Assembly (NCBI GenBank): GCA_965644315.1 | Contig: CBFFRQ010000031.1 | Location: forward strand, 1-64,000 | From: Caecitellus pseudoparvulus | Taxonomy: Eukaryota; Protista; Bigyra: Bicosoecida | Reading direction: 5' to 3' | DNA: 64,000 bases | Part shown: piece by piece, positions 1 to 21,613 of the stretch | How positions within the stretch are numbered: the stretch's first letter is position 1 | How the letters are laid out: the number at the start of each line of letters is the position of its first letter | The notes under the pieces: model-generated | Databases searched by the model: none | What the model saw: only the letters and a program-made list of their open reading frames with translations | Told to the model about the DNA's origin: nothing | Made by a program: the position numbers and the translations under genes

Positions 1-1147
1 AACCCTAACCCTAACCCTAACCCTAACCCTAACCCTAACCCTAACCCTAACCCTAACCCTAACCCTAACCCTAACCCTAACCCTAACCCTAACCCTAACC
101 CTAACCCTAACCCTAACCCTAACCCTAACCCTAACCCTAACCCTAACCCTAACCCTAACCCTAACCCTAACCCTAACCCTAACCCTAACCCTAACCCTAA
201 CCCTAACCCTAACCCTAACCCTAACCCTAACCCTAACCCTAACCCTAACCCTAACCCTAACCCTAACCCTAACCCTAACCCTAACCCTAACCCTAACCCT
301 AACCCTAACCCTAACCCTAACCCTAACCCTAACCCTAACCCTAACCCTAACCCTAACCCTAACCCTAACCCTAACCCTAACCCTAACCCTAACCCTAACC
401 CTAACCCTAACCCTAACCCTAACCCTAACCCTAACCCTAACCCTAACCCTAACCCTAACCCTAACCCTAACCCTAACCCTAACCCTAACCCTAACCCTAA
501 CCCTAACCCTAACCCTAACCCTAACCCTAACCCTAACCCTAACCCTAACCCTAACCCTAACCCTAACCCTAACCCTAACCCTAACCCTAACCCTAACCCT
601 AACCCTAACCCTAACCCTAACCCTAACCCTAACCCTAACCCTAACCCTAACCCTAACCCTAACCCTAACCCTAACCCTAACCCTAACCCTAACCCTAACC
701 CTAACCCTAACCCTAACCCTAACCCTAACCCTAACCCTAACCCTAACCCTAACCCTAACCCTAACCCTAACCCTAACCCTAACCCTAACCCTAACCCTAA
801 CCCTAACCCTAACCCTAACCCTAACCCTAACCCTAACCCTAACCCTAACCCTAACCCTAACCCTAACCCTAACCCTAACCCTAACCCTAACCCTAACCCT
901 AACCCTAACCCTAACCCTAACCCTAACCCTAACCCTAACCCTAACCCTAACCCTAACCCTAACCCTAACCCTAACCCTAACCCTAACCCTAACCCTAACC
1001 CTAACCCTAACCCTAACCCTAACCCTAACCCTAACCCTAACCCTAACCCTAACCCTAACCCTAACCCTAACCCTAACCCTAACCCTAACCCTAACCCTAA
1101 CCCTAACCCTAACCCTAACCCTAACCCTAACCCTAACCCTAACCTAA
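1..1147. repeat. Terminal telomere tract (CCCTAA)n / (TTAGGG)n, ~190 units
   Basis: Uninterrupted AACCCT hexamers from base 1 to 1140, then a variant AACCTAA. The C-rich strand on + marks a left chromosome end. Confidence 0.99.
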
Positions 1148-1372
1148 ACTTTCCAAATGTCAAGCTAATCACAAGTTGTGAAGTGCTAACATTGCCTAAT
1201 CCAGGCGCTCGTGCACCCAAGTGTGGTGTTGCACAGTGCTTGCTGGTTGGGTGGTGCGCACCGGGGCGGGGTAGTGCGAATTCCGCACACCATCGCACCG
1301 TGGCTCCCAGTTTGCGCCCTCGGTCGGGGCATGCACCTGGGATCGACATCAAAAGCATCATTGACAAGCATC

Positions 1373-3456
1373 ATGAACGCCCAAGTGGATCAAGTCCTGG
1401 GGGTCCTCTTCGTGGAGGGGTGCCTGAAGCGCAAGCAAGTGCTCGGCCCCAGAACAGGTGTCTTCACTGACATGCCACGTCGGGGTGCCGCACGCACCTT
1501 CGAGCTTGGAGGACCCCTGCCCAAGACTGATCATGATAGTTCATCTTCGGCACGGGACATGTGGCTCGAGGTCTATGGGGAAGCCGCCGAACGGCTGATC
1601 CCAGGGCTGAGTGCGGAATTCGGCAACGCCAATGCGGCCCTGCGCCAGGGACCCACCGGATCGCCAACCATCCTCGTCACGCTCGGAAGTGAGGGTGATT
1701 CACCAACAGTGGCACGTCAACTTCGCATTCTTGCTGCTCAAGAGGACGACTTCGCCATTCGAGTCGGCCAAGGTGGGTTCGTCGCCGTGGCCTACACCAA
1801 CACCAAGCAGTTCGCATCGGCGAAGGCGAAAGTGAAGGTGAAGGCCCACCCCACCGCCATCCAAGTGGCCCACCAAGTGACCAAGGAAGCAACCGAAATC
1901 GCCTGCCAGTCAGGTGATGTTGCCAAGGTCATGTGCCTCGTTAGGTCCCACTTCGACCATGGCCCCGTGCCAGCCCAAGCCGTCCGTCCCAGTGTCAGAC
2001 AATCCGTCCCCTCCGAGGGTGATGCACCTGTCGACACCAAGACACCATCGACCTGGACTGACACTCAGCTCGACAAGGCACCGAAGAAGAAGAAGACCCG
2101 TCGAGGCAAGCGAGGAAAGGGCAAGTCAGCCGGACGATCCCTCACCTTCGAGGACGTCTTCATCAAGAACGTCCGGCCACCTGCACCTCGACCAACCTCA
2201 CCACCTGCCACCCAAGGCTCACCCAAAGATACCGTCACCACCCCTGTGGTGCATGCCATGTTGCCTTCATCAAGGGTGCAGCGGGGCGTCGACCGCAAGT
2301 GGCCGTCCCCCACCCCGTCGGGCGAGGCAAGCCCCGAGGTGCACCGGTATCGGCCGTCTGCAGCAGCAGCATGGGAGGTGATCACAAGGGTGGTGCCTCT
2401 TCATGACAGTGTGCGGACACCCGAGCACCTGGCCGAGTACCCCATCAAGCCTGGCCCTCTGGCCGACCTGCTGTCATCGACCCACGTGTACTCTAACGTG
2501 GGGGGCGGGCCTGTGTCCAGGCCTGTCTCGAGACGGCAGCAGGGGAGAGGGTCTTCGAGGCTGGGGACCTCCTCCTACTCCAGCATGCAGCCACCATCAA
2601 CGCTGCCCAGCTTGCCTTCAAGCACATGGTCAGGCAGCTGGAGGGGGTGGTCAGTGACTCGTCCAGCTCGGACATCATGGACGTCGGCCAGAAGCCACCC
2701 TCCCCCTTCCGCTCAGACGGGCAACGGGTGGCCGTCTTCCGCAACATGCTGCACCAGCACTCGCCGGATGACACCTTCCTGGCCCCAGGTACACCACCAG
2801 TCCTGCTTCCCGGCCTGCACCTGCTCATCGACCGCATCAACCAAGGGTACCGTGCCCCAGCCGGGCATGATGACCTTGGCCAGGCCGGCGTCGACCCCAG
2901 CCAGGTTGATGAAGAGGGTGACCAAGAGGGGCACCTCGACGGAGTGCTGTATGCCTTCGCACTTCGAGAGGTGTGGACCGACAACACGGCCCATCTGCAG
3001 CTCATCCTCGTCGACCATGATCGAGGCAAGCTGGTGCTGTGGAACCCCGACATCCCTGACCTCCATGACGAGCTGCCCCTGCACAAGTGCATGACCCGGC
3101 TGGCAGCCGAAGGCATCAACGTCTTGTACCGGATCTGGACCACACCCGAGGCGGGCAGTCCAGCACCCTTCCGGGACAGGCTTCGAGGGGCACTCCAGTC
3201 TCTCCGAGATGACTTCCCCCCCCTGCCTCACAAGGCCACCGACGGCACCGTGCACCCCCAGACCCTCATCGCTGGCAAGGGCACAAGGGTGGCCATGCCT
3301 CATGGGCGGATGACCCGACAGCAGGCCGCCACCCTGGAGGCTGAGGTCAAGGACCCCCTCAAGCGGCTGGTGCCTGAAGACGGCGAGGGTCGCCTGCCCA
3401 AGGTCAAGGATGTGCCCCACATCTCGATCGGGCAGATGGGTGGACGCCTGATGTAA
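1373..3456 (+). CDS. Unit A protein of unknown function (ORF1/Gag-like candidate), split by a -1 frameshift at the G-run 2500-2505
   Basis: The 1211..3094 frame reads protein-like from the ATG at 1373 to ~2500, including a basic KAPKKKKTRRGKRGKGK patch, then turns Ser/Pro-rich. The frame of ORF 2626..3456 is open from the G-run (GRACVQACLETAAGERVFEAG...). Joined length is ~690 aa. Confidence 0.5.
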
Positions 3457-3870
3457 GTCACCTGTGGGGGCATACTCCCTGTGCCACACATGACTGAAGC
3501 TTTGTGTCGCGACCGACGCACATAGCTGACATCGGACATTGGAAAGTCCAACCCAACCTCACCATCACCAACCCAACATCGATACCAACACATCAGGACT
3601 CGGCTCAGTGGAAGGGGAAGGCACTTGCAGCAAGATCTGTGAGGCCGCCCCCAAACCTGAGCCGAAGGGACAGCCGGGCTGGGTCGTGTGCTTGCATCTC
3701 AGCAACACCCAGTCCGTGTCGAGTCCATATCCTCCAGCCCACACCGCCACCCAAGCCAAGCAAGTCGGGTCTCCACCCCTGGACATCGGACCGAGACGGA
3801 CGAGACTGGACTGGACGGACAAGACAAGAGTGGACCGAGACCTGGACCTACACCTCAAGACCATCCCACC

Positions 3871-4090
3871 GGGGCGGGCGCTGAAGCGCCAAGACAGACG
3901 GCGACTTATACAACGGACACGAGTCTGTGCTAGTCGCAAAGCCGTGCAAGCGGTGCCGTCGTGGTGTCTGTGTCACTGCATTCTGTTGTGGCGCAGGTGG
4001 CACCACATGTCCAAGCCCAAGCTGTACCATGATGTAGCCTGCATGGAGGCAATCTGCAATGCATTGAGTAGCTAACCCTAACCCTAACCT
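3871..4090 (+). ncRNA. Structured RNA module, copy 1, ending in telomeric C-strand repeats
   Basis: Hairpins GGCGC-TGAA-GCGCC, ACGGAC-ACGA-GTCTGT, CCGT-GCAA-GCGG, GTGGTGTC..GGCACCAC and CCATG..CATGG, then AATGCATT-N6-CTAACCCTAACC. Homologous to 9270-9460 and 11669-11875. Confidence 0.8.
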
Positions 4091-4094
4091 TCGG

Positions 4095-7000
4095 GTGAAG
4101 CTTGGCATACGATCTCATGCAAGAGTCTCATCAGCACGACAGGTAGCCGCTCCGCCCTGGTGGTCTTCAGCAACCGAAGAAGGGAAGGTCGCACAGCAGA
4201 CCTTCAGGACGTGCCTCGATGAGGCGACGAGGATGGAAGAGGCACAGCATCCCCCCACCTCTGCCTGGACTCTACAGTGCATGAACACTGCGATTGCCCA
4301 AGCTGCGAAAGAAGCTCACGCAATCTCAAGAGTGCCCCGGACTGAGCTCCCACAACCGCAAACCGCCATCCAAACCCAAAGCCGAGTAAAGAAGCGCATG
4401 ACAGCGCGAGTGTCGCAAATCAAAAGAATTCGAGAGCGGGTCAAGCGGCGTCTAGTGCTGATCCAATCTGGAGGAGCGATGGCCCCAGCCTCTCTCAAAC
4501 TCCAAGTACAGGAGCAACTCTCAATGCTGGAGGAAGATGAGAGCAGCTGTCTGAGGGAGAGAAAGACGGCAATGCGCACCTGCACCCGACTCACTGCCAA
4601 GCTGAGGAAGAAGACCCTTGCTTGTGTCAAAGCACGCATCAAAGACCTGGCTAAGTCTGACCCCTTCAAAGCTCATGTGCACATCCGCCGGCTTTCAGGG
4701 AGGCCGCGCAACTCGGGCAGCTCGGCAATATCTTCAGTCATGACAGACACAGGATCCCTCAGCTCAGATCCTGACACACTACGTCAAGAGGTGGCGAAAC
4801 AAATGGGTGCCATCATCAGCAAACCTACTCTCCCTCGCACACCACTGAAGTATGGACTTGGTCGATTCCTTCCTTCATCAACTCCGGAGTTCCAGCCCCC
4901 AGAAGACTGGCTTCCAAACACATCAGAGGTCCTCCGCTGTATAACAGCACTGAGCCTGCACCGCCACCCCGGCTCAGGAAAGTTTCAGGCGGAGCATATC
5001 AAATACGCAAGCACACCCTTTCGCCTTGCATATGCTCAGACCTTGATCAACTCCCTGTCAAGCGGAACGTGCCCTGAGCTGTACCATGATGGAATAGGTA
5101 CCCTGATCCCGAAGAAGACGAGCGAGGTGGGCCGGCCGGCATCCTACAGACTGATTGTCTGTAGGCCAGCCCCTGCAAAGCTGTTCTTCTCAGCAGTGGC
5201 GGCCTCCCTGGAAAAGTGGATGTCCAGCTGGATATCTCCTGAGCAGGCAGGCTTCACAGCCCGACGCAACACTCACGAACAAGTCATCGCTCTCCAAGAA
5301 GCAGTCAAAGGGCATTTGCGACACTCACCTTCAACTCGACAAGTCCTTATCTTGTTTGTTGATTTCAAAGGGGCGTTTGACTCGGTCAGCCATTCTTGCA
5401 TCACGGAGATCCTCAGAGATGCAAAAGTCCCTGCTCCGCTCCTCAATCTGGTCAACAGCTACATGCACAAAGCTACCGTCTCCATCAACACGGCAGCAGG
5501 ACTCTGCCCCCCCCTGCGTGTCACAACGGGTGTTCCCCAAGGGGGTGCTCTTTCACCACTGCTCTTCAAGATTGCAATCGACGTTGTCTCAAAGCGCCTG
5601 GCAGAACTCCCGCAACAAGGGGTCCAAGGCACAGGTATCTCAACTCCTGACGGATACCTCACACACACGTTGTATGCTGACGACTTGGCGTGCTTAGCAA
5701 CCACCCCATCAGGACTGCATCGAATGTTCAAAGAGGTCAAGACAATTGGAGAACGATCAGGGTTGCTGATAAACCCCCGGAAGAGTGGGGTGATGATCAT
5801 CCCTGGTCGTGACGGGACCTCATCACAACACACCAGCGACAGACAGAAGGCCCTGTGGAGATCGAAGTACCTGAGAAGTGGTGAAGAGCTGAAAGTGAAC
5901 GGCACACCCATCATTCGAACTCCCACGTACATGTACCTTGGAGTCCCCATGGCTGAGAACCTCATCCGGTCCAGAGCACTTGCACTTGAGAAGGCGCAGA
6001 TGGCCTGCACACATGCTGGGTTCTCCTGTGGAGCGGTCTTCTCAGGGGCCTGGCTAGGAGTGAAGCTGAAGAACCAGATTGGAAGAGCTATTGTCACATC
6101 CTCAGCCGACTATGTCCTGTGCACACAAGCCAACAGCCTCTTGATACCTCTGCGACAGGTTGACCGGGGCGTGTCCAAAGCCCTGAGCAAGAGCCTTCTC
6201 TGCACACAGAGCTCACTCATGAGGCCACACAGTGCCGCAACACTCGCACTATGCGGTATCAAACCAGCCCACATCAGGTCAACTCAGCTTCGTGTGAACC
6301 TCTTCCGAAAGATGCTTGCACGCCTCCATGATCGCTCCCCCTTGGCAAAGTCCCTCCTCCTCACCATTCCCCAAGCCATAGACATGCTACCACCAAGCAT
6401 CTCGACCGCGTTCGTTGTCCAAAGCACTGTACAACTGCAGCACCACCAAGCCAAACAAACGCCACTACCTTGGGCACTGTTTGGGATCCTTGACCTATGG
6501 ATGTATGGATGTCTGCCCGATCTGAACGATCTGAAAGATGCTTGCCTAGCAGAGGGGTCACGAAAGCAGCAAGCACTCACAGCAGTTCTCACATGTCTGA
6601 AGAAGCCACCACACTCTGCGAAGATCGAGGTGATGGGCATTGCGGTACCACCCATGGCAACTATAGACACCCCTCCGCAGTTTCAGTCACTCACATCATG
6701 GCAGACACGACACCAGGTGGTTGCCTCATATCTGCATGTGGTGCAAACCAAGCAGAGCATAGCAGCCGGCTACTCCGCATCGTCAAGACTCCCAAGCGCC
6801 ATCAAACCACGCCCTCATCATGTTGGCATTGGAGCACAACACTTCACAATGCTGCACCCGATCCCATCTGGGATCAGCCCCCTCCTGTGGGCATGCGCCG
6901 AGGACAAGCCTCTCTGCAACATGGTTCATCAGTGGCAGACACTACAACTCTTACATGGAGGGGATGACCCAACACTCTACTCGACCTGTCCACTGTGTGC

Positions 7001-7163
7001 CACTGAAGTCCCTGCAGACCTCCACCGCCACGTCATCCTCCACTGCCACAACCTCAACACACCAAGGCGAGCAGCCATTGAGAGACTTACAAATCTCCTT
7101 CAAGAATGTGAGGACGAGGCAAGCACTCCGAAGACAACTGTCCAACACCCCCTCAAGCTGTGA
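4095..7163 (+). CDS. Non-LTR (LINE-type) reverse transcriptase with C-terminal CCHC zinc knuckle; no endonuclease domain visible
   Basis: Motifs PPWW linker, SYRLI, QAGF, FVDFKGAFDSV, GVPQGGALSPLLF, YADD, GLLINPRKS, YMYLG and CPLC..HVILHC. The ORF opens right at the telomeric junction without an ATG (first ATG ~4232). Confidence 0.95.
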   Translation: MKLGIRSHARVSSARQVAAPPWWSSATEEGKVAQQTFRTCLDEATRMEEAQHPPTSAWTLQCMNTAIAQAAKEAHAISRVPRTELPQPQTAIQTQSRVKKRMTARVSQIKRIRERVKRRLVLIQSGGAMAPASLKLQVQEQLSMLEEDESSCLRERKTAMRTCTRLTAKLRKKTLACVKARIKDLAKSDPFKAHVHIRRLSGRPRNSGSSAISSVMTDTGSLSSDPDTLRQEVAKQMGAIISKPTLPRTPLKYGLGRFLPSSTPEFQPPEDWLPNTSEVLRCITALSLHRHPGSGKFQAEHIKYASTPFRLAYAQTLINSLSSGTCPELYHDGIGTLIPKKTSEVGRPASYRLIVCRPAPAKLFFSAVAASLEKWMSSWISPEQAGFTARRNTHEQVIALQEAVKGHLRHSPSTRQVLILFVDFKGAFDSVSHSCITEILRDAKVPAPLLNLVNSYMHKATVSINTAAGLCPPLRVTTGVPQGGALSPLLFKIAIDVVSKRLAELPQQGVQGTGISTPDGYLTHTLYADDLACLATTPSGLHRMFKEVKTIGERSGLLINPRKSGVMIIPGRDGTSSQHTSDRQKALWRSKYLRSGEELKVNGTPIIRTPTYMYLGVPMAENLIRSRALALEKAQMACTHAGFSCGAVFSGAWLGVKLKNQIGRAIVTSSADYVLCTQANSLLIPLRQVDRGVSKALSKSLLCTQSSLMRPHSAATLALCGIKPAHIRSTQLRVNLFRKMLARLHDRSPLAKSLLLTIPQAIDMLPPSISTAFVVQSTVQLQHHQAKQTPLPWALFGILDLWMYGCLPDLNDLKDACLAEGSRKQQALTAVLTCLKKPPHSAKIEVMGIAVPPMATIDTPPQFQSLTSWQTRHQVVASYLHVVQTKQSIAAGYSASSRLPSAIKPRPHHVGIGAQHFTMLHPIPSGISPLLWACAEDKPLCNMVHQWQTLQLLHGGDDPTLYSTCPLCATEVPADLHRHVILHCHNLNTPRRAAIERLTNLLQECEDEASTPKTTVQHPLKL

Positions 7164-7711
7164 CTAGAGCCATACGTGCCAGCTTCACTAACTTGTGCGT
7201 TCCGGAAGACCATGAAGAAGCCATGTACCGCCTCATTCTCTGTGGTCAATGGCCATGGTATTGGGGACAAGGCGATACAGGCCAACAAACATCCAGAGAG
7301 CAGGCCAGTGTGTACAGCTTCCCATACATAAGGTTCCACAAGGGGACACAGACAAGATCTCCACCCCGCTCTTGGAAGGATCTCCAGCGGCGCGCTGCTG
7401 AGTTTGCTGGGGACGCATGGCGAGCAATCGTGGCAGCCCTTCTTCGAGACAGGCACCCTGATAGACTCCATGTACATTCCCATGCAAGGCATCTCTGGTG
7501 GTCAGTGTTTGGCAGAGACACTCCACTACCTGGGCACAGAGACGCAGATCCCTCTGTAGTCACTAAGCATCCCCGACCACCCAAACCTGCAAGAATTAGA
7601 CGCTTTTTTCCAGCACGAGCCGGACAAGTACCTTCCCATGAAGGCAAGGTACAGCAAACTTTGCGGAGTATGCTTCGCCGGAACGTGGACGCTCAACACG
7701 ACAGCCCCTGA
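7112..7711 (+). CDS. Probable frameshifted C-terminal continuation of the RT protein
   Basis: The -1 frame is open from 7112, overlaps the RT stop at 7161-7163 and reads protein-like (EEAMYRLILCGQWPW...). Confidence 0.4.
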   Translation, partial: GRGKHSEDNCPTPPQAVTRAIRASFTNLCVPEDHEEAMYRLILCGQWPWYWGQGDTGQQTSREQASVYSFPYIRFHKGTQTRSPPRSWKDLQRRAAEFAGDAWRAIVAALLRDRHPDRLHVHSHARHLWWSVFGRDTPLPGHRDADPSVVTKHPRPPKPARIRRFFPARAGQVPSHEGKVQQTLRSMLRRNVDAQHDSP

Positions 7712-7832
7712 CAATTCCCGCACTCAACCACCCTCTAAAAAGTGTGGCGAGGGTCGTCATGTCCCCCCCAACCGACCCACATGCTCCTAGACACCACCTT
7801 CGATTCCAAACATTAGAACAAACAACGCCCTC

Positions 7833-8834
7833 ACAGCATACACAGGCCATGCAACCTGTCCGTTCCTGGATCCTGACCATGCAGCACCGCTGCGTGCCGC
7901 CCGTCGCCCTCCAACACCTCCTTCATGGCCAATCCGCCGGCCCACAGGCCGCCACACCATCCCATCCGGGCCACGATACTGACCTGACAGCATACACAGG
8001 CCATGCACCCTGCCTGCTACTGGATCCTGACTGCGCAGCACCGCTGCGTGCCGCCCGTCGCCCTCCAACACCTCCTTCATGGCCAATCCGCCGGCCCACA
8101 GGCCGCCACACCATCCCATCCGGGCCACGATACTGACCTGACAGCATACACAGGCCATGCACCCTGCCTGCTACTGGATCCTGACCATGCAGCACCGCTG
8201 CGTGCCGCCCGTCGCCCTCCAACACCTCCTTCATGGCCAATCCGCCGGCCCACAGGCCGCCACACCATCCCATCCGGGCCACGATACTGACCTGACATCA
8301 TACACAGGCCATGCACCCTGCCTGCTACTGGATCCTGACCATGCAGCACCGCTGCGTGCCGCCCATCGCCCTCCAACACCTCCTTCATGGCCAATCCGCC
8401 GGCCCACAGGCCGCCACACCATCCCATCCGGGCCACGATACTGACCTGACAGCATACACAGGCCATGCACCCTGCCTGCTACTGGATCCTGACCATGCAG
8501 CACCGCTGCGTGCCGCCCGTCGCTCTCCAACACCTCCTTCATGGCCAATCCGCCGGCCCACAGGCCGCCACACCATCCCATCCAGGCCACGATACTGACC
8601 TGACAGCATGCACAGGTCATGCACCCTGCCTGCTACTGGATCCTGACCATGCAGCACCGCTGCGTGCCGCCCGTCGCCCTCCAACACCTCCTTCATGGCC
8701 AATCCGCCGGCCCACAGGCCGCCACACCATCCCATCCAGGCCACGATACTGACCTGACATCATACACAGGCCATGCACCCTGCCTGCTACTGGATCCTGA
8801 CCATGCAGCACCGCTGCGTGCCGCCCGTCGCCCT
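7833..8834 (+). repeat. Tandem array, 154-bp unit, ~6.5 copies, in the 3' region of unit B
   Basis: ACAGCATACACAGGCCATGCA recurs at 7833, 7987, 8141 and onward with few substitutions. The ORF track shows the same 154-nt periodicity (8003, 8157, 8311, 8465, 8619). Confidence 0.97.
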
Positions 8835-9269
8835 GTTTGCGTTTGTCTGCTGACAGCGCACCAGCCCTCACAGCCCCAGCAAGTGGTGAAGTCAGGATCC
8901 CGTGACGCGACACGATTAAATGATGCAGGACTTGCACGATGATAACACTTTGTCCAAGCAGTTGATTTGTTCGTGCTGCAACAGTCGCTCCACAGCTCAT
9001 GGGCTCACCTGTACAATTGCGGAAAACGCACATGGATCCTTCGATTTCCGCACACGCACCTGCTCTCCAAAGCCATGAAACCGGCGCACGTGCAAAGAGA
9101 ATGCCCTTTCAGTGACTAATTTTACGTTCCTGCATAAAATGGTGTTGAGATTTTGACTGAAAAGTGTGAGCCCCGGTGTGATTGCCTGGTTTGCTGAACT
9201 ATGGCATTTACAAGTTTCGTGAATGATGGGAAAATCAGTGTTTCGAGGACCACCAAGACCTTTTCCTTT

Positions 9270-9460
9270 TGGAGCGGATACTGAAGTATCCTAGCACATG
9301 GCGACATATATAACGGACTTAAGTCTGTGTTTGTTGCAGAGCCATGCAAATGGTAGCCATGCTGATGTGAGTGACCGCCTCGCGGTTTGTAACATCTACT
9401 GTGAAGCTCCAGCTGAACCGCACATGAACAAGTGTGGAAGTGAAATGCATTACATCTGAC
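9270..9460 (+). ncRNA. Structured RNA module, copy 2, joined to the internal telomere tract
   Basis: GGATAC-TGAA-GTATCC, ACGGAC-TTAA-GTCTGT, CCAT-GCAA-ATGG, TGGAGC..GCTCCA and CCGCAC..GTGTGG, then AATGCATTACATCTGA-CTAACCC. Confidence 0.8.
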
Positions 9461-9672
9461 TAACCCTAACCCTAACCCTAACCCTAACCCTAACCCTAAC
9501 CCTAACCCTAACCCTAACCCTAACCCTAACCCTAACCCTAACCCTAACCCTAACCCTAACCCTAACCCTAACCCTAACCCTAACCCTAACCCTAACCCTA
9601 ACCCTAACCCTAACCCTAACCCTAACCCTAACCCTAACCCTAACCCTAACCCCTAACCCTAACCCTAACCCT
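9460..9672. repeat. Internal telomeric tract (~35 CCCTAA units, one CCCCTAA variant near 9650), same orientation as the terminal telomere
   Basis: Read directly from the sequence. Confidence 0.99.
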
Positions 9673-10427
9673 GCTGCTTTTTGTCCTCTTGTTGTTCCTC
9701 CTGTGAGTTCTTCAAAATATACGCAAACTTTAGCCATTAGTTCCATATTAAATTTTTCAATTAGTGGTTGAGATGATGAATTAATAACATTCTTAAGCCC
9801 TAGCATATCTTCAATAAATCTAATTAATGTAGATTTGCCGCAACCTTCAGGACCTTTTAAAACTATCATAGACGTATTTTTATTACCTTGAATCATATTA
9901 GCTATCCATTTAATTAAATAATTATAATTCTCCTCGTTTCCATTTGATAAGACACGTAAGAAATAATTTTTTAGTAAATAATCAACTTTCTCTTTTAAAT
10001 CGTCTGATGTTTGTTCGTATGGTTCAGGTTTAAATTTGAGAGGTGGTAATAAATTAAATTGGTTTTCTTTTAATTCTTCGTGATGAAATTTAACAACTGC
10101 TTTTTTAAATCCAATATATGAATTTTTGAACCAATATTTTAAAGGCTTAGGAAACACTTGTAATTTTTTATTAAAAATTTTATCAGATATGAATTTATCA
10201 TTAACTATGTATTTTTCAGCATCTTCACATTTAAAAATGGTTTTAGATATGTAAGCCTTACATTTTAATAATAAATCATCATCTGTTATATTCTTATTAC
10301 GTGCTTTTTTAACTATGTCTTCTATTGCTTCTTCTTCATACATTTTAATAAGTTTATCAATTGCGAATTTTGGTTGTTGAATATCCATTATATAATATAC
10401 TAGATAAAATATTTTTTCTTTAAACAT
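9673..10427 (-). pseudogene. D5-like superfamily 3 (primase-)helicase, C-terminally truncated; the frame runs on into telomere repeats (VRVRVR)
   Basis: NYNYLIKWIANMIQ pre-Walker helix, Walker A GPEGCGKST, Walker B VCVYFEE. The sequence is cut ~12 codons after Walker B. Alternative ATG at 10388. Confidence 0.85.
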
Positions 10428-10483
10428 ATTTTTTTATTTAGATATTTTATATTTTTAAAAATTCCTAGATAAAATATCCTAGA
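10401..10483 (-). promoter_or_regulatory. Cluster of four AT-flanked TCTA motifs resembling the CroV/mavirus late promoter
   Basis: TAGA on + at 10401, 10439, 10466 and 10480. Two lie 12-16 nt upstream of the candidate ATGs at 10388 and 10427. Confidence 0.55.
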
Positions 10484-11668
10484 TATAATTTTATGATTTT
10501 CATATTTTATATTTTAAAATGTGAGAGACTGTTTTTTATTATATATTCGCACACGCCCCACGCTATGTCGGATTTAGTGATTAAGTGATTAAGTGATTAA
10601 GTGTTAAGGGTTATAATGGATTTAGTGTTAAATGATATATGAATAAGTGATTTACAATGTATCTTTTTATTTTGTCATTTCGCCTCCTTTGATTGTTTCT
10701 AAAATAGGGTAATTGGATGGATGGTTGATTGCTTCAATTTTGTTTGGACTGATTGTCAGATAAGGGCTAAGAATAGTCTCAGAAAATATATATATATATA
10801 TATTTATTATATTTTTTATATTATTTCTATTTTTTGTAGTGATAACCCTTAAGATAACACTTATAAAATAGTAGTAAAAAGTAAGTAAAAAATATAGTAA
10901 AGGGTTTATAAGTGATTGTTTTTATAGGGATAGTGTCTAATAAGTGTTATAGATATAATATAAATATATCTAAAAATGGTATATATAAATAAAGTCTAAA
11001 AATATAGTATAAAAATATATCTGTTTTTAGTCGCAAACTGCGGCAGCAGTTGAGACATATCGCTCATAAATTCATTTATGAATTTATTGTCCCCCACGGT
11101 CGTGGTTGAGCGAAGTGCAGGTGCGCATGGAGGCGATGTCCTTGATCGATGATGAAACCTGTGGAAAGTTGGAAGATGATGAAGTGAATGTGTCCAGTAT
11201 ACTTACATGATGGCTCGGGGTCCATGTGCAGCTCCAGTGAAAATCCTGTGACGGGGCGCGCGGAATTTGGCAGGGTGAACACGCGGGCGCGCGGGGAAAC
11301 GTCGCAGGCGGGGCGCACCGGTCCTCAGGGCCTTGATTGATGGAATGACTGGATGTTCTGTAAAAAGGAGGAGGTGTTCGTGGTGTTCTTGGTGCTCGGG
11401 TGGCGTTGTTCCGGCTGTGCGCGCTGCTACCACCGGCGTGGTGCAGTGCAGCACCGTCGTGAAACGCTACCCGAAGGCGGCCACTGCGGCTCAGGACAGC
11501 GCGCAGTGGCCCCAGGCACACGTGCAGTGCCTGGCAAGGGCCAGGAGAAGCGGGGGGTTTCTGAATTATGAAGCGAAGTGTGGACTGGGACGAAGCAGGA
11601 GTGGACCCGGCCCCCTCTGGCTCAGCCGACTGAGCCGAGAGGGCGCGGGCGGGGCAGTTCGACACGTA

Positions 11669-11875
11669 TGGGCGGGCGCGGGCGCGCCCTAGCAAGCGGC
11701 GGCTCATACAACGGACGTATGTCCGTGATGGCTGCAGACCCACGAGAGTGGGAGCCGCTGTAGCGCTCCTGGTGTGCCTTGTGCACAGCAGCGAGCGCTA
11801 CATGTGATGCCCAAGCTGTATCGCGTGCAAGCGTGAAGGCGACATGCAATGCATTCAATGAGCTAACCCTAACCT
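11669..11875 (+). ncRNA. Structured RNA module, copy 3, ending in CTAACCCTAACCT
   Basis: GGGCGC-GGGC-GCGCCC, ACGGAC-GTAT-GTCCGT, CCCAC-GAGA-GTGGG, TGTAGCGCTC..GAGCGCTACA, TGGGC..GCCCA and CGCGT-GCAA-GCGTG, then AATGCATT-N7-CTAACCCTAACC. Confidence 0.8.
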
Positions 11876-14006
11876 GGAGGGGGAAGTGCTCCCCACAAAC
11901 GCCAAGGGCCTCGAAATCGCCATAGCAGGGATAATGGTGCAGGAACTCAAAGCCATTGGCATTGAGACGATCCCTGTCATCGTCACTGACCTGGATTCCG
12001 CTGTGCATGCGGCTTTCGACGGGTTTGCTCTGGTGCATGTCGCTGACAAGAACCACTACATGAAGAGCTTCTGCAAGCCCCTGTCTGAGATGCCAAGCAA
12101 GCTGGCGACAGCAACAACAGCCCTGCCATCTATCACACGCCGTGAAGTGATCCAGGACATCAAGCAGGGCACCTTGGCGGCGCGGGGAGCTGCGCGCCCA
12201 GCCAAGGTTGCGCGACCAGCTGCCGCAGCCCATACGTCGCCACAGCCTGACAGCATGGAGGCCATGCCACGTATCAACCAGAGCGACTATGCAGCATTAT
12301 ACAGAGCTGCTAAGACTGAACAACCCGACCGCTTGACTGAGCCGCTCGTGCAGAAGCTGCTTCTTGTCACGGGGGCAGGGGAGGCCATCCCCGACCTGGA
12401 GCGTGGCTTCCTGCAGAAGCGCTACCTGGCAGCACTTGCCGACGCGAAAGCAGGGCCAACTGAGGAGGACGAACAGCACCCAGAGGACTTTGATGATGAC
12501 AGTGACGAGGAAGGAGGGGCAGCTGCGCCCACTACCCCCACAGCCAGAGGCGCCACCAAGCGAAGCAGGTCGGCTGCTGCTCCACTCAAGACCAAGGCTG
12601 CCGGGAAGTGGTTGCAAAGCAAGATGCGCCGCAACGTCCTGCAGGCTGTAGGAATTGCAACGCAACTTGGAACTCCGTATCGTGCCAGGGAGCTCATGCA
12701 GATCTCCGTACAGCACTACTGTGGCGACCACTCACAGTGCCACCTGCTCTTCAACAAGCAACCTGGAGATTGCCGAGCTGGGGCTATCTTCAGCCCCGAT
12801 GGTCCAGCTGCACAGTACATGACAGCCCTCTTTGATCAGTACTTCGGATATGTTGGCCAAGTCAGGCTGGACTCGCTGGGTGTCCTTCTTCTGCTCCACA
12901 CAAACGCGTGTGAAAGCTTTGGGGCTGGCGCACGGAGGTACACCCCAAAGGACAACGCCTTCCGCACACGCTGGCCTGATGGCACCTTGAAGCAACTCGC
13001 AGACGTGCACATGGGCTGTGCACTTTCACGAGAGGTCATCTTGAAGGAGCTGGGCTGCAGCATGCCCCGCTCCATGCAGCGGGTGTACAGCGAGGATGAC
13101 GAGCGCAAGGCACGGGCCGTGGAGCAGTCCCTGTCTGGAGCAAGCAGTGCAAGGAAGGCCAAGCAAAACAGGGCACGCATCGTCACCTGCAGCAAGGTGA
13201 CAAAGTCTGCCATTGACACGTATAAGGTGGAGGGGCTGTCCGGTGCACAGCTCGAGCGCGCCGCGAAGCTCGCTGCCACAGCCGGCTTGCGGCAGGTGTT
13301 AGGAAAGCACGCAGCCACCCGCAGAGTTGTGGCGGGGGCAGCCAAGGCAGTGCTGGGTGGAGGAGGGCCACATCCAAGACAGCCGATGCCGCAAGGGCGA
13401 GTTACTGTTGTGGAAGGGTCTTGCGTCGGGCGGCCGAAGCGTGGTCGGCGTCGACGAAAGAGCCCGGTGGTGCCAGAAAGCACACAAGACCCTGCAGTCC
13501 CCCTAGAAGAAGAACCAGAGGAAGCGGGTTTTGAAGAGACTGAAGATGAGGGTTGTGGCGGAGAGTTCATCGCCCAGCAGCCTCGGGCATTCACAGGCTT
13601 CCTTGACCAGGAGGAGGGTGCAGCGTACGGGTGGCAGCACGGCGCCGTTCGGTACGCCCCGGACGCCTTCGACGTTCCCGTGTACGGGATCGAGTACTTT
13701 GTGCTGGGCAGGTGGACACAGTCGCTCTTCCATGCCCGTAAGCTGGACATGGCAGACGGGGAAGTGGACCCGGAGGAAGGGGCACCTGACGTGACGGAGC
13801 GGGGGGGACCGATGTGCCTGCGGCGTGTACGGCTGTACGGCATGAGGCCCCAGGAGGAAGGGGACGACGAAGACTGTCGGCCTGTCGGGGACATGGTTGA
13901 CATTGCCACTGTGCCTCTGGCCCAGGGGCCCCTGCGCGCGTACTCCTTCGAGGTTGCAGCGCAGGAGGCTGCTGAGGCTGCCGCGATGCCGTCTCCTGGG
14001 AAGTAA
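11876..14006 (+). pseudogene. Mutator-like DDE transposase, N-terminally truncated at the telomeric junction
   Basis: IVTDLDS (cf. DGDS), DKNH (cf. CxxH/DxxH), HYCGDHSQC and HTNACESF match the motif order of Mutator-like transposases. The first catalytic Asp region is missing. Confidence 0.65.
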
Positions 14007-15353
14007 GTATTGCATTTCTGGCTACCCAGATGACTTGAACCCAGTGCCACTGACGCCAAAGGCATCCTGGATGACTGTCACAAGCTCTTGTGGCAGTGGA
14101 AACCTGCGCCCAGCACACAGGAGCACGCGAGCAGCCAGAGTGTAGCAAGTGAACCTGCGAGCAGCCCCAACACGCCTTGTGTTTGAGGACGACAGGGTTG
14201 CCAATTCAACACCACTCAATGTCGAGGCCCCTTGCTCCAGCAACCACTCATGAAGTTCTTTCTTGGCGCTCTGTGTCAGTGCGCCGTACAGCTGTTGAGC
14301 TGCGATGGTGAGGTGGCGAAGTTGGAGCTCCGGAGGCCTCATGCAACGCCATTGAAACTCTTACCCCACGTTCCGTCCTCATGGCATGATGGTGACAGCT
14401 CCTCCGCGGCCGCTGCAAGGCCAGGCACCTCTGGAAGCTCAACAACTGCCAGCTCCTCTGCAGTTCTGCCCTTCAGTGCCTCCTCGCCGCCACCTGTAGC
14501 TGTGACTTGACGGCGGGTGCGTTTCCGGGGCCGTTTTGGCATGCTAATCAGGGGCCAGAGCACGCTCAGGTGAAGAGACCAAAATAAGAATACGGCGGCC
14601 GGATGAATTGGAATGGTGTGCAAATGAAGGCATTCCTTTGTATTTTGGTGGCGCCCTGCTCACTGTACAAGCCGCCCCTTTGTGCCGGTGAGGAGGGCAA
14701 TCCCGAAACGCCCGCAGAAACCCCTTGCCCGGATTGACCGTGAGCCCATAAACTTATTCTCGACGCACCGTTCTCTTGGCGTTCTTTGACCATGAAAGTG
14801 GCTTTTCTTTGGTGTGCTGCGCCTACTTGCTGCCGGAGAATTGATCCACACTTGCCTGGGTCATAGGCAGAGCCTGTCCATACGCGCTTCAGGCACATCT
14901 CTTCCCTCTATGTCCCCGTCGGCCTGGCCCCGCCACAGCTTCAGACACGAGGCCAAACTGGACACACTCTCCGCCTTGGCACAACTCAAACCGAGTCTTG
15001 CCACGGGCGGCAGAAATTCAACCTGGAAATCAGCATGCAATGAAATTCTTTAACTCGCAATCGGTGTGAGCCAGTCTATCCGTGCACTGCGTCAGGAGGT
15101 GGTGCGTGCAGCGCTGGCGTGTCGCTTTCCATTGCGATTTCCGCACAAGTAGCCCTGCCGCACTCTTCGCACAAAGACGGACACAGCCGTTTCACCTGCA
15201 TGTTCACAGGTTTGATATCATCAACTGTTCCCATCTTCCCCTGCTGTGCACCTGCTGCTCTTCTGCGCGACATCACGGACCTTCGCTTGCACGTACCTGG
15301 CTCAACCTGTGGCTCAAACTTCAACATCGGCCACTGACATCCTGGGGCCAGTC

Positions 15354-16517
15354 ATGGCAACCATTGGTGATCCAACACACCTCAAGACCCAGTGGAAAGA
15401 CGCTTGTAGAGAGGAGGATGCAGATCAGCTTTGGCAATTCTTGCAGCAAGCCAGCGGCCACACTGCCACTTTCTTTGAGGCACTGGGCAGTTCAGACACA
15501 ACAGATGGGTTTCAGGCTGCATGCCAGAGAGGACATTTGAAGTTGATGCGCGAGCTGCTGAAACTGGTAGGTGGTCTGGCAGTGGATGTGCACGCGGCGG
15601 ATTGGTATGGATCTGAGGCGGCCTTCCGAGCGGCATGTGCCAATGGTCACATTGACATCGTGCGTGAGCTGCTGGGCCTGACTGGGGTGCGAGAAGTTGA
15701 TGTGCATGCGGCGGATGATGAGGGACCTGAGGCCGCCTTCCGAGCCGCATGTGCCAATGGTCACATTGACATCGTGCGTGAGCTGCTGGGTCTAACTGGG
15801 GCGCGGGCAGTGGATGTACACGCGGCGGATGGGGGTGGACCTGAGGCCGCCTTCCAGTGGGCATGCCGCAATGGCCATACAGACGTTGTGCGCGAGCTGC
15901 TGGCCCTCTCTGGGGCGCGGGAAGTGGATGTGCACGCGGCGGATGATGATGGACCTGAGTCCGCCTTTCGAGACGCATGCCTCCACGGCCGTACAAACGT
16001 TGTGCGTGAACTGTTGGGCCTGACTGGGGCGCGGGAAGTGGATGTTCACGTGGCGGATGAGATAAGCCCTGAGTTCGCATTCCGAGTAGCATGCAGATAT
16101 GGCCGTACAAACGTTGTGCGTGAACTGCTGGCCCTCTCTGGGGCACGGGAAGTGGATGTACATGCAGCAGATGGGGATGGACCTGAGGTCGCCTTCCGAT
16201 GGGCATGCCGCAGGGGCCGCACAGACGTCGTGCGTGAGCTGCTGGCCCTGACTGGGGCGCGGGAAGTGGACGTGCACGCGGCAGATGAGGACGGACCTGA
16301 GGCCGCCTTCGGAAGCGCATGCAAGGCTGGCCACAAAGACACCATGCGTGAGCTGTTGGGCCTCACGGGTCACCGGGCAATTCCAGCTGTCATCTGGCAA
16401 CACAAAGGTGGGTATGTTGCGCAAGCTGCTCGTGATGCAGTGTGGACTGGCACCAGCACTCGTCATGGGCGGCGTGCGATGCTCTTCCTGAGATCCCGTG
16501 GTTTGGGGCGAGTGTGA
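15354..16517 (+). CDS. Ankyrin-repeat protein (~8 repeats of 38 aa)
   Basis: Repeats of VDVHAADxxGPEAAFRxACxxGHxDxVRELLxLTGAR. The ATG at 15354 aligns with the N-terminus of the paralog at 24437. Confidence 0.9.
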   Translation: MATIGDPTHLKTQWKDACREEDADQLWQFLQQASGHTATFFEALGSSDTTDGFQAACQRGHLKLMRELLKLVGGLAVDVHAADWYGSEAAFRAACANGHIDIVRELLGLTGVREVDVHAADDEGPEAAFRAACANGHIDIVRELLGLTGARAVDVHAADGGGPEAAFQWACRNGHTDVVRELLALSGAREVDVHAADDDGPESAFRDACLHGRTNVVRELLGLTGAREVDVHVADEISPEFAFRVACRYGRTNVVRELLALSGAREVDVHAADGDGPEVAFRWACRRGRTDVVRELLALTGAREVDVHAADEDGPEAAFGSACKAGHKDTMRELLGLTGHRAIPAVIWQHKGGYVAQAARDAVWTGTSTRHGRRAMLFLRSRGLGRV

Positions 16518-18356
16518 TGAAAATGCACCACTGAAGTGACCGTGACCGCCATGGAGTCAGCTCGATCTGGCCAGCATAGCAGCCCACTCGCCTTCACACA
16601 CACACTGTTGCCACCATGACTTCTTGGCATGGCTTCCACCTCGTTCCCCCGGGCTGCTGCTTTTCAAAATGCCTCTTCAATTGACTTCCTGACTATTCTA
16701 CAGCTCTGCTTCTCACCAACATTCTCCTACTACCTTCCACTAGCATGCCAGCGCCGACGCTTGACTTTGGTGCGAGGTGTTCCATCTCCCAGATGCCCGA
16801 GAATCGCTCTGATCTGTGTTTACGCTGAACTCTGGCTTTGCCTTCCTCCTTTCCGAGTGCGATGATCGGTTGCCTGTGCAGCCAAATCCACACTTCCACC
16901 TCAAGCTTGGATGATCAGGTCAATCGAAGCGTCAAGCTGGCACCAAAAATGACCTGCGCGCACGACCCTTCATGATATCTGCATCAGCTGCCCCGGCCTG
17001 TACCCCGCCCTCCCACAATGCGGGAGTGGCTTCCACACATCCAACTTCTCGCGCCCAGCCTGGACAACTGCTTCCTGCGACACCAGTGCTCGGAAAGTTT
17101 CGCTGCCAGCCTTGCTCCGGACTTCACAAGGTATTCACACAAGAGTAGCCACTAGTGGATCTGAAGCGAGTTTTCTCTGGCCTGCCCCTCCCCACACTTC
17201 GCTCTGTTACCCACCTTCATTTGTCTGTCCAACGCAGCGTTCATATCCATCGCAGTCAGGAAGTGCACCGCTTGTATCCAAGCCATTCTCCGCATTGTTC
17301 CGTATCTTGCATGTTCCAACGGCTTCCAGGGCCCGCCATAAGCGGTGGCAGGACGAGGCCAAGAGCGTGCTGCTTCGGGGAAAACGCAAGTTGCTCGGGG
17401 CGGAGGTGAAGTTCTTGACCTTCGCCTTCTGTGGCATTTCACTTTTGCGATCCAGCCCCCTTCACCCTGACAGCTGGCCAAACTATCTCCATCCACCCGG
17501 CTTTCTCCGAAGTCGCCACGGCACGCCAGTGGGGCAGTTCGATCACCTTGACTTATCTGCGATGTTCAGTCTGAGCACTTGCAGTTTCAGGTGAATCTCT
17601 GGCCCCCCCGCCGACAACTTGGCCAGCAAGCTGCTAGTGGTTCCACGAGCAATTCATCTCCACAGCGGCTGCAAACTTCCAAAGCAGAAGCGGCATACGG
17701 GAAGGTTCGCAACCTTCACACCTTGTGCAAGGTGCTTTTCATGGTCATTGGCTCATCAAGCACAGCAGTCGCCCACAATATAGGTTTATTTCTCCAGAAT
17801 CGGCAGCGCCTCACATGCAAACCACAACCGATTTCCGCAGCACAGTTCGCAGTTCTGCATAGCCCCCTGGCGGCCTGTCCCTCAGCAGTGGTAGGAAACA
17901 GAGCCTCTTCTCAATCTCAATTGCAATAAGCACTGAAGCTCGCCGCCCTAGCCTCCCACTCCTGCTTCCTTCGCTTCCAGGCTGCATTGTACCTTTGACT
18001 GGCTCAGCTCACCACCAGCAACGCATGGTGGAAGTCGCCGTTCACGAAGGCATGGCTGATCATGCGTGAGTTCTCCAATCCAAATCAAGTGGCATCTTAC
18101 TATATAATGGAAATTGTAAGCTTGCTTGTTTGGTCAGCTCCAATGGCGGTGCAGCCTCGACTTATAAAGGGAAGGCTTGCGCCCTGTCCACGGTGCGACG
18201 CGCGATGAGCCCGGCAAGCTGCTTCGCGTTGCACATGCTGCACTTGTTCAAGCTCACTGGAAAATGAATTACATGCACAAGGAGGGTCTTGCGAAAAAGC
18301 TCCACGGCACTTCAACGGTTGGAGTCGATGTCGATGGTTCTGGGCAGCTCTATCGG

Positions 18357-21300: not shown

Positions 21301-21613
21301 AGCAGCGTGTTCATGCCGCGCACTATCTTTCCCTTTGCAGCCTCTCGATCCGACCCGTCCAGATCCCGCAGGATACCTGGCAGTGCGGGACAAGTTAGTG
21401 CCAGAGCTGCTGCGGTAGTTGGGAAGGTTCCCTGCGCCAGTCGCAAAATAGAAGTGCGCCAACGCTTGCGGCAGCAGGCAAGTACAAATGCCACCTCAAC
21501 ACAGCACGTACCCGTGGCAGCTCAGGAGGCAGATACTCCACGGCCTCCTCCAGCCCAAGATCACGCAGGGCAGTGTGCAGTCCCCCAGGCTCATACGCAG
21601 ACGGCGATACCAT
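18357..21613 (-). CDS. Crinkler/RHS-like protein: short N-terminal header, Lys/Ala/Glu coiled coil, P-loop NTPase and putative C-terminal PD-(D/E)XK-like domain; intron 21432-21511
   Basis: Walker A LLTGVPGCGKS, Walker B VVIVDEAN, C-terminal PGVDALLVY..VLVEVT. Removing an 80-nt GTACGT..GCAG intron joins the ATG at 21613 in frame to ORF 18357..21494. Confidence 0.7.

What the first reader, a model, noticed from the sequence alone, without database searches (positions are those of the whole stretch)
3871..11875. Unrecognised ~200-nt structured RNA module, three diverged copies, each fused to telomeric C-strand repeats
Seen in sequence: copies at 3871-4090, 9270-9460 and 11669-11875 are collinear and keep the same helices with different sequence (copy1 / copy2 / copy3). 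Long-range closing helix: GGGC:GCCC / TGGAGC:GCTCCA / TGGGC:GCCCA. Hairpin: GGCGC-TGAA-GCGCC / GGATAC-TGAA-GTATCC / GGGCGC-GGGC-GCGCCC. Junction helix: GACGGC:GCCGTC / CATGGC:GCCATG / AGCGGC:GCCGCT. Inner helix: GCGACT:AGTCGC / GCGACA:TGTTGC / GCGGCT:GGCTGC (its first GC overlaps the previous helix, so the register is ambiguous). Hairpin ACGGAC-NNNN-GTCYGT has three different loops. GNRA hairpin: CCGT-GCAA-GCGG / CCAT-GCAA-ATGG / CCCAC-GAGA-GTGGG. A long variable hairpin, conserved AGCTG and another hairpin follow, then invariant AATGCATT, 6-8 nt and CTAACCCTAACC. G-U pairs and GNRA loops favour a + strand RNA. Inference: this is a selected cis-acting RNA (RT-recognition signal, ribozyme or telomerase-RNA-like domain). 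I cannot match it to hammerhead, HDV, group I/II or tRNA folds.
Basis: partly seen in the sequence, partly recalled or inferred. Interest (0 to 1): 0.95.

Follow-up and report, generated by a model that had tools for sequence, protein, structure and literature searches.

The report
Telomere-docking RNA of nuclease-less retrotransposon
A previously uncatalogued folded RNA of about 195 bases ends each of three mobile units stacked on one chromosome tip of a marine protist, and most likely lets a LINE retrotransposon that has lost its DNA-cutting domain copy itself onto the telomere instead.

Summary
The three copies are 63-64% identical, all on the + strand. Of 50 consensus pairs, 22 show compensatory double changes, more than any of 850 null alignments. 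Rfam has no match, and no fourth copy occurs in the window. The window begins with a telomere. Copy 1 sits exactly where the APE endonuclease lies in a collinear relative (47-52% identical) of the neighbouring LINE reverse transcriptase, and the endonuclease is cleanly gone. Copy 2 ends that LINE and is followed by 35 telomeric repeats that cut a virophage-like helicase gene. Copy 3 is joined through 12 nt of repeat to a probably truncated transposase gene. Best reading (0.6): a 3'-terminal RNA that the RT recognises and that presents a CUAACC tail to the G-rich overhang, so units are added to chromosome ends without nicking. This works like Athena/Coprina/Terminon elements but is not a member: the RT is LINE-type and there is no hammerhead. 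Rivals are TRAS-like insertion with endonuclease supplied in trans, and a telomerase-like reiterative RNP. Limits: three copies, one chromosome end, no further copies in public data, no experiment.

The parts
1..1144 (+). terminal telomere, (CCCTAA)x190; left chromosome end
1145..3456 (+). unit A coding region: N-terminal part of the LINE polyprotein in two overlapping frames (1211-3094 and 2497-3456); stops 3 codons before where the APE domain starts in the relative; 5' end capped by the telomere
   Evidence: 3004-3441 = L007 aa 1-147, 52% identical, third codon positions 35%
3457..3871 (+). unit A spacer / 3' UTR; no residual APE similarity
3872..4071 (+). RNA module copy 1
4072..4089 (+). 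tail of copy 1, (CTAACC)x3
4090..7163 (+). unit B ORF: non-LTR (LINE) reverse transcriptase with C-terminal CCHC, beginning in the last strand of the missing APE domain; first ATG at 4233
7148..7711 (+). C-terminal helical extension of the RT protein, in another frame than 4090-7163 (frame change in a C run near 7150; relatives read through); no restriction-like nuclease fold
7829..8834 (+). 154-bp tandem array, 6.5 copies, 97% matches, in the 3' UTR of unit B
9269..9459 (+). RNA module copy 2, 3' end of unit B
9460..9672 (+). 35 telomeric repeats: former chromosome end
9673..11035 (-). AT-rich (24% GC) virophage/Polinton-like-virus fragment; D5-like primase-helicase ORF 10427-9673 cut by the telomere tract just after Walker B
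11036..11668 (+). unit C upstream sequence, 59% GC, no recognised coding; a 30-nt block also found upstream of copy 1
11669..11862 (+). RNA module copy 3
11863..11874 (+). tail of copy 3, (CTAACC)x2
11875..14006 (+). target of copy 3: ORF with a weak Mutator-like transposase match that starts at profile position 221 of 357, i.e. probably broken at the junction
   Evidence: E 0.004, below the family cut-off

Best explanation
The module is the 3'-terminal cis element of a telomere-attaching retroelement system derived from an APE-type LINE. Shown: each copy is a conserved + strand RNA fold followed by CUAACC repeats starting in one register; the three lie head-to-tail at a chromosome end with 5' ends toward the telomere; the RT ORF lacks the APE domain that its relatives have. 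Inferred: transcripts end in module plus a short CUAACC tail; the RT binds the fold (multi-helix junction, YAUAYA loop, UGMAAUGCAUU); the unpaired tail anneals to the G-rich 3' overhang of a short telomere or freshly seeded break; the DNA 3' OH primes reverse transcription without nicking; erosion and telomerase capping then truncate the 5' end. Units A (N-terminal protein only), B (RT) and C (no recognised ORF) carry old, diverged versions of the same signal and share the RT.
For: Polarity: a left telomere's overhang is the - strand, and a + strand RNA ending in CUAACC is the one that can pair with it and extend it leftwards (sequence). Copies 2 and 3 are 3'-terminal: what follows is a 35-repeat tract cutting a D5 helicase ORF at residue 241 of a protein that continues about 230 aa in its relative, or 12 nt of repeat joined to a truncated transposase-like ORF. 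APE loss: L007 aa 1-147 and 418-919 match 3004-3441 and 4095-5597; its APE (PF03372, aa 184-409, E 1e-6) has no counterpart; both flanks show third-position divergence typical of coding constraint. The loss is derived: the RT groups 100/99 with L019 and the APE-bearing P0128 and P0129. No second nuclease: the C-terminal domain models as all-helical with no fold match. Tail positions 3-12 are 73-100% unpaired in all copies. No copy away from CCCTAA junctions in 64 kb. Precedent: EN-deficient Athena/Coprina/Terminon elements attach to G-overhangs through reverse-complement repeats beside a 3' fold (PMC6431247; bioRxiv 2021.04.23.441226); EN-independent L1 inserts at uncapped telomeres (PMC4700185).
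Against: One chromosome end and three copies; no other copy was found in public collections, so genome-wide restriction to telomeres is untested. Whether the tail is in the RNA or is target DNA cannot be read from one genome copy. Unit B could be an ordinary 5'-truncated copy of an APE-bearing element. The RT ORF has no AUG until codon 56, though the upstream codons are conserved (39% aa), so its translation is unexplained. Related LINE contigs show no module, but they end within about 500 bp of the ORF while unit B's module lies 1.5 kb downstream.
Confidence: 0.6

Rival explanations
1. TRAS-like system: the module is a large 3' UTR recognition signal of an APE-proficient LINE family that nicks and inserts into telomeric repeats. 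The repeats are target DNA, unit B is a chance 5' truncation, and A and C are non-autonomous passengers.
For: Close relatives keep APE (L007). TRAS1/SART1 insert in a fixed register and need only 2-3 repeats (PMC7265360), which fits a constant junction phase and tails of 2 and 3 repeats. The junction retains the last few APE-strand codons with CC/CCT microhomology, like a healed break.
Against: A ends about 3 codons before APE and B starts within about 10 codons of its end; a random truncation landing there is of the order of 1% (my estimate, 30-60 nt in about 6 kb). No poly(A) at any junction. Modules 1 and 2 are 37% diverged with unalignable UTRs, so A is not a recent deletion of B's family.
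Confidence: 0.17
2. Telomerase-like RNP: the CUAACCCUAAC(C) tail is a reiterated template and the module is its anchoring/boundary domain. The LINE RT (or host TERT) adds repeats by slippage and sometimes runs through the boundary, copying the whole unit onto the end.
For: All tails start at CUAAC, the 5' boundary of the vertebrate template (own knowledge). Copy 3's tail is one 12-nt pass. A conserved motif lies 6-8 nt upstream, and the first CU of the tail is predicted to pair with an AG in every copy, as a boundary would. Three of four telomere junctions read CTAACC|T, suggesting one seeding mechanism.
Against: No conserved pseudoknot 3' of the tail, a feature of all published TRs (PMC8287931). 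The RT matches R2 and L1 structures, not TERT. The same facts follow from simple annealing to telomerase-made GGTTAG-3' ends. The terminal 190 repeats have no module. The AG partner differs in copy 2. Four junctions are few.
Confidence: 0.12
3. The module is a self-cleaving ribozyme of an unknown class that makes the unit RNA's ends, as the hammerhead is proposed to in Terminons. This is compatible with the best explanation as an added role.
For: Size, nested junctions, GNRA loops, an invariant internal loop, and an invariant GC with three possible partners. Analogy to the HHR in Terminons.
Against: No CUGANGA/GAAA core, no HDV-like topology on either strand, no group I or II core. No Rfam ribozyme at E<10. 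No covarying pseudoknot found. A cut 3' of the tail would need conserved downstream sequence, which is absent.
Confidence: 0.15
4. Intergenic IRES (dicistrovirus-IGR-like) that starts the downstream ORF at a non-AUG GCU codon.
For: Copy 1 lies between two ORFs. Copies 1 and 3 run in frame as GCU AAC CCU AAC into long ORFs. ORF B has conserved codons upstream of its first AUG.
Against: Copy 2 is followed by 35 repeats and an antisense ORF. Copy 3's ORF looks like a broken transposase. Two of three frames of CCCTAA are open, so matching frames arise by chance one time in three. No Rfam IRES hit and no pseudoknot at the start codon.
Confidence: 0.05
5. Neutral old duplicates of a GC-rich sequence, or retro-copied fragments of the host telomerase RNA (TERC-ITS-like).
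For: TERC fragments beside telomeric repeats are known in rodents (PMC2246262).
Against: Neutral divergence never reproduced the covariation. TERC-ITS fragments are 31-118 nt pieces of one gene in opposite orientation to the repeats; here 195-nt full folds are co-oriented and separately selected.
Confidence: 0.02

Closest known systems
Athena / Coprina / Terminon endonuclease-deficient Penelope-like elements
   Same: No endonuclease; 3'-terminal RNA fold directly followed by short reverse-complement telomeric repeats; head-to-tail chains at chromosome ends; 5' ends truncated and capped by telomeric repeats; captured foreign ORFs (PMC6431247; bioRxiv 2021.04.23.441226).
   Different: The RT is non-LTR/LINE type with a CCHC C-terminus and APE-bearing relatives, not PLE/TERT-like. 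The fold is about 195 nt with no hammerhead core. It would be a convergent solution.
TRAS1 / SART1 (Bombyx, APE-type telomeric LINEs)
   Same: APE-lineage LINE at telomeric repeats, fixed junction phase, structured 3' UTR read by the RT; TRAS-like C-strand polarity (own knowledge).
   Different: These keep and need APE and end in poly(A); here APE is absent and there is no poly(A).
HeT-A / TART / TAHRE (Drosophila)
   Same: Terminal addition, 5' ends distal, division of labour between an ORF1-only unit and an RT unit.
   Different: TART and TAHRE keep a conserved APE (PMC5537684); they use oligo(A) tails and the host has no telomeric repeats.
MoTeR / FoTeR (fungal telomeric non-LTR elements)
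   Same: 3' ends followed by a few TAACCC repeats (PMC12857005).
   Different: They carry a C-terminal restriction-like endonuclease; the C-terminal domain here is helical with no such motif.
Telomerase RNA
   Same: Structured RNA with a CUAACCCUAAC stretch and a conserved element just upstream.
   Different: The template-like stretch is at the 3' end with no pseudoknot after it; several diverged copies are embedded in retroelement units.

Membership tests
Athena/Coprina/Terminon EN- PLE | RT of the Penelope/TERT clade | tested here: not met
   PDB matches are R2 (1e-20) and L1 ORF2 (2e-15), no TERT; clade with APE-bearing LINEs 100/99
Athena/Coprina/Terminon EN- PLE | Hammerhead ribozyme as the 3' fold | tested here: not met
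   no CUGANGA or relaxed core on either strand; no Rfam hit
Athena/Coprina/Terminon EN- PLE | No endonuclease domain | tested here: met
   for this copy
Athena/Coprina/Terminon EN- PLE | Short reverse-complement telomeric repeats right after the 3' fold; head-to-tail terminal chain, 5' capped by repeats | tested here: met
Athena/Coprina/Terminon EN- PLE | Repeats present in the element RNA | not testable with these tools
   needs RNA-seq or 3' RACE
Non-LTR (LINE) retrotransposon, APE lineage | Non-LTR RT with C-terminal CCHC | tested here: met
   RVT_1 E 2e-29; CxxC-H-C invariant in five relatives
Non-LTR (LINE) retrotransposon, APE lineage | APE domain N-terminal to RT | tested here: not met
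   present in L007, P0128, P0129, absent from the window
Non-LTR (LINE) retrotransposon, APE lineage | Assignment to a named clade | tested here: inconclusive
   deep branches unresolved and no curated references in the tree
TRAS/SART | Telomere-specific APE | tested here: not met
   supply in trans not excluded
TRAS/SART | Poly(A) at the 3' junction | tested here: not met
   spacers GAGTAG, ACATCTGA, CAATGAG
MoTeR/FoTeR/R2-type (RLE) | C-terminal PD-(D/E)XK nuclease after CCHC | tested here: not met
   no RHN/PD motifs in alignment; all-helical model, pLDDT 64, no PDB fold match
Telomerase RNA | Template of 1.5-2 repeats, single-stranded | tested here: met
   12-nt stretch, mostly unpaired; formal only
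Telomerase RNA | Conserved pseudoknot 3' of the template | tested here: not met
   sequence after the tail is unrelated target DNA in each copy
Telomerase RNA | Reiterative templating with TERT | not testable with these tools
   needs an assay
HDV-like ribozyme | Nested double pseudoknot with L3 YYC, J1/4 GG and J4/2 C | tested here: not met
   strict descriptor 0 hits on both strands of all copies; a loose one hit copies 1 and 3 but not copy 2. My descriptor was not validated on known ribozymes.
Any Rfam 15 family (incl. GIR1, twister, pistol, hatchet, IRES, group I/II, SRP, RNase P) | CM match | tested here: not met
   ARAGORN negative

The most novel reading that the evidence does not exclude
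A LINE has re-run the step proposed for the origin of telomerase: it lost its endonuclease, split into a non-RT unit and an RT unit, and acquired a dedicated structured RNA whose 3' CUAACCCUAACC serves as a reiterated template, so the retroelement RNP itself adds TTAGGG repeats as well as copying itself.
Probability: 0.12. Interest if true: 0.95.

Novelty: new variant of a known kind. Interest (0 to 1): 0.78.

Why it matters
Nuclease-free attachment to telomeres through an RNA fold plus complementary repeats is described for Penelope-like elements. For LINEs I found it described only as an opportunistic event of endonuclease-independent L1 in repair-deficient cells. My literature searches turned up no natural LINE family built this way, though the library lacks most subscription papers. 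If real, it is an independent origin of the Terminon strategy with a different RT and a new RNA fold, and APE-bearing relatives are in hand as the ancestral state. It gives a small testable system (one RT, one 200-nt RNA, one telomeric primer) for the old question of how a retrotransposon RT and its RNA could become telomerase-like. The RNA is also a new structured motif absent from Rfam.

Tried and rejected
Rfam at gathering and E<10: only chance snoRNA/lncRNA scores. Pattern scans of viral, metagenome and GTDB (85) collections gave only chance hits: no module around them by eye (22, 43, 55) or by CM (78, 90). CM R1 finds no fourth copy in the window or in any related locus. Protein search with the unit A domain was blank; that tool sees only proteins of 0.55-1.75 times the query length, so this says nothing about longer kin, and homology came instead from L007. 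Exact look-ups of window proteins failed. AlphaFold of the unit A domain was unusable (pLDDT 34), so a possible Cys-His-Asp protease there stays a guess from the alignment. The host could not be named: accessions gave no papers; the same species is in ENA ZHEN20-1 / SRR6144757 (99.2% over 14.9 kb), and near-identical genes occur in SRR8404393/4 and SUHA22-1. The primary Terminon and Athena papers were not held; I cite a review and a later paper by the same group. Rejected: decayed APE in 3457-4090; group I P7 and group II domain V resemblances; tRNA/tmRNA (117); IRES as the general role. No contig taken for human was met.
Full report
Observation. The three segments exist as described and are homologous: 63-64% identity, with local scores far above shuffles. 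The consensus fold has a closing helix, a 5' hairpin, a three-way junction (junction helix, inner helix with a YAUAYA internal loop and the ACGGAC/GUCYGU hairpin, GNRA hairpin), a long variable hairpin and a 3' hairpin after AGCUG. 22 of 50 pairs change on both sides and 94.6% of cells pair. Since the structure came from these same rows, I refolded nulls from scratch: none of 400 column shuffles and none of 450 neutral-divergence simulations reach the energy or the number of double changes. The + strand is preferred (-69.6 vs -49.6 kcal/mol). The 3' motif is UGMAAUGCAUU, and all tails start at CTAACC. The fold between AGCUG and the tail is less certain than the 5' domain: single-copy predictions disagree there. 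Rfam has no match. A covariance model finds only these three copies in 64 kb, and the only CCCTAA runs in the window are the terminal telomere and the three tails. The 600 bp upstream of the copies are unrelated, apart from one 30-nt block shared by copies 1 and 3.

Context. The window is the left end of a chromosome of an intron-poor, probably flagellated marine protist (about 60% GC). The same species occurs in public metagenomes but could not be named; it is not human. Bases 1-1144 are telomere. ORF 4068-7163 is a non-LTR reverse transcriptase. Its relatives are LINEs with one giant ORF containing APE and RT, and the RT forms a 100/99 clade with them. The decisive comparison is L007. Its residues 1-147 match window 3004-3441 (52%) and residues 418-919 match 4095-5597 (47%). 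Its APE domain in between (PF03372) has no counterpart in the window; 3442-4094, holding copy 1 and three repeats, stands in its place. The upstream ORF stops about three codons before the APE start and the RT ORF resumes in the last APE strand; both flanks have coding-type substitution patterns. The C-terminal domain is helical with a CCHC knuckle and shows no restriction-like nuclease. Copy 2 closes the RT unit's 3' UTR and is followed by 35 repeats that cut an AT-rich, virophage-like D5 helicase ORF in mid-domain. Copy 3 is joined by 12 nt of repeat to an ORF whose weak Mutator-like match lacks the first 220 profile positions (below cut-off). So copies 2 and 3 are 3' ends laid onto former broken chromosome ends.

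Mechanism. Shown: fold, position, polarity, and loss of APE in this copy. From established telomere biology: at a left end the 3' overhang is the G-rich - strand, and only a + strand RNA ending in CUAACC can anneal to it and be copied outward. That yields units with distal 5' ends, as seen. Inferred: the module is the RT's handle, the tail (predicted unpaired beyond its first two bases) docks on the overhang, and no nick is needed. Read from inside out, the end was broken in the transposase-like gene, received unit C, broke again in the viral fragment, was capped with 35 repeats, received B and A (together or in turn), and was capped with 190 repeats. Modules 1 and 2 are as diverged from each other as from module 3, so the units are old lineages sharing one signal. 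I put this at 0.6. Unexplained: how ORF B is translated (first AUG 46 codons after homology starts), why three of four junctions read CTAACC|T, and why an invariant GC has three possible invariant partners.

Rivals. TRAS-like insertion with APE in trans (0.17) fits the fixed phase and short tails (PMC7265360), but needs a chance truncation at the domain boundary and finds no poly(A). A telomerase-like reiterative RNP (0.12) fits the register, the 12-nt tail and the upstream motif, but lacks the pseudoknot of telomerase RNAs (PMC8287931) and is not required by the data. An unknown ribozyme (0.15, not exclusive) has only analogy; known cores were not found. IRES (0.05) fails for copies 2 and 3. 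Neutral duplicates are excluded.

Comparison. It works like Athena/Coprina/Terminon elements, which lack an endonuclease and attach to G-overhangs by reverse-complement repeats next to a hammerhead (PMC6431247; bioRxiv 2021.04.23.441226). It is not a member, because two defining features were tested and not met: PLE-type RT and hammerhead. It is an APE-lineage LINE by RT but fails the APE test; TART/TAHRE and TRAS/SART keep APE (PMC5537684), and FoTeR/MoTeR keep an RLE (PMC12857005). Endonuclease-independent L1 insertion at telomeres is known only in repair-deficient cells (PMC4700185).

Limits and verdict. All attempts to enlarge the alignment failed. Related LINE contigs end too early to show their 3' ends. 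Everything therefore rests on three copies at one chromosome end, without expression or activity data. The RNA is real, selected and uncatalogued. Its most likely role is a known strategy reached with different parts. Novelty: new variant of a known kind; interest 0.78.

Noticed in passing
window 9673-11035: AT-rich fragment of a virophage/Polinton-like virus: D5 primase-helicase 39% identical to one on a 21.7-kb IMG/VR contig (L024) that also has a packaging ATPase-like and a tyrosine-recombinase-like gene; GATTAAGT repeats at 10571-10652 may belong to its terminal region.
   Followed up: partly
window 2490-2560: Frame change between the two unit A ORFs at a G run followed by a 12-bp hairpin; could be a programmed -1 frameshift or a homopolymer error. 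The downstream frame has Cys...His...Asp positions that line up with P0128/P0129 and recall a cysteine protease.
   Followed up: partly
window junctions 1144, 4089, 11874 vs 9672: Three of four telomere-to-unique junctions read CTAACC|T, i.e. the first repeat has two Cs; may reveal the template's 3' flank of whichever enzyme seeds the repeats.
   Followed up: partly
window 3806-3836 and 11581-11607: A 30-nt block shared upstream of copies 1 and 3 (p<0.001), absent before copy 2; possible promoter or extra element of the non-RT units.
   Followed up: no
window 15246-36267: Subtelomeric cluster of ankyrin-repeat genes with a 38-aa (114-bp) unit on both strands, interleaved with two AAA/NACHT-like NTPase ORFs (18357-21494, 26153-27814).
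   Followed up: no
window 38057-45544 (-): 2495-aa ORF with no Pfam match.
   Followed up: no
L004:1-20 and 7579-18753: A distant APE-bearing relative with a 3724-aa single ORF lies 7.5 kb from a CCCTAA contig end in the same polarity, suggesting the lineage was subtelomeric before losing APE; the contig stops at the ORF end.
   Followed up: partly
L006:496-497: This relative is 96% identical to the window up to 6615, lacks about 80 bp, then is 76% identical: looks like a recombinant or deleted subfamily copy.
   Followed up: no
L054:2064-2561: An isolated RT fragment of the family (60% identical) among DNA-transposon debris in the host's metagenome sample, without module or repeats: some family members sit away from telomere junctions.
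   Followed up: partly
L023: A 236-kb viral contig carries a distant LINE-type RT (25% identity); unrelated to the module and not examined further.
   Followed up: no
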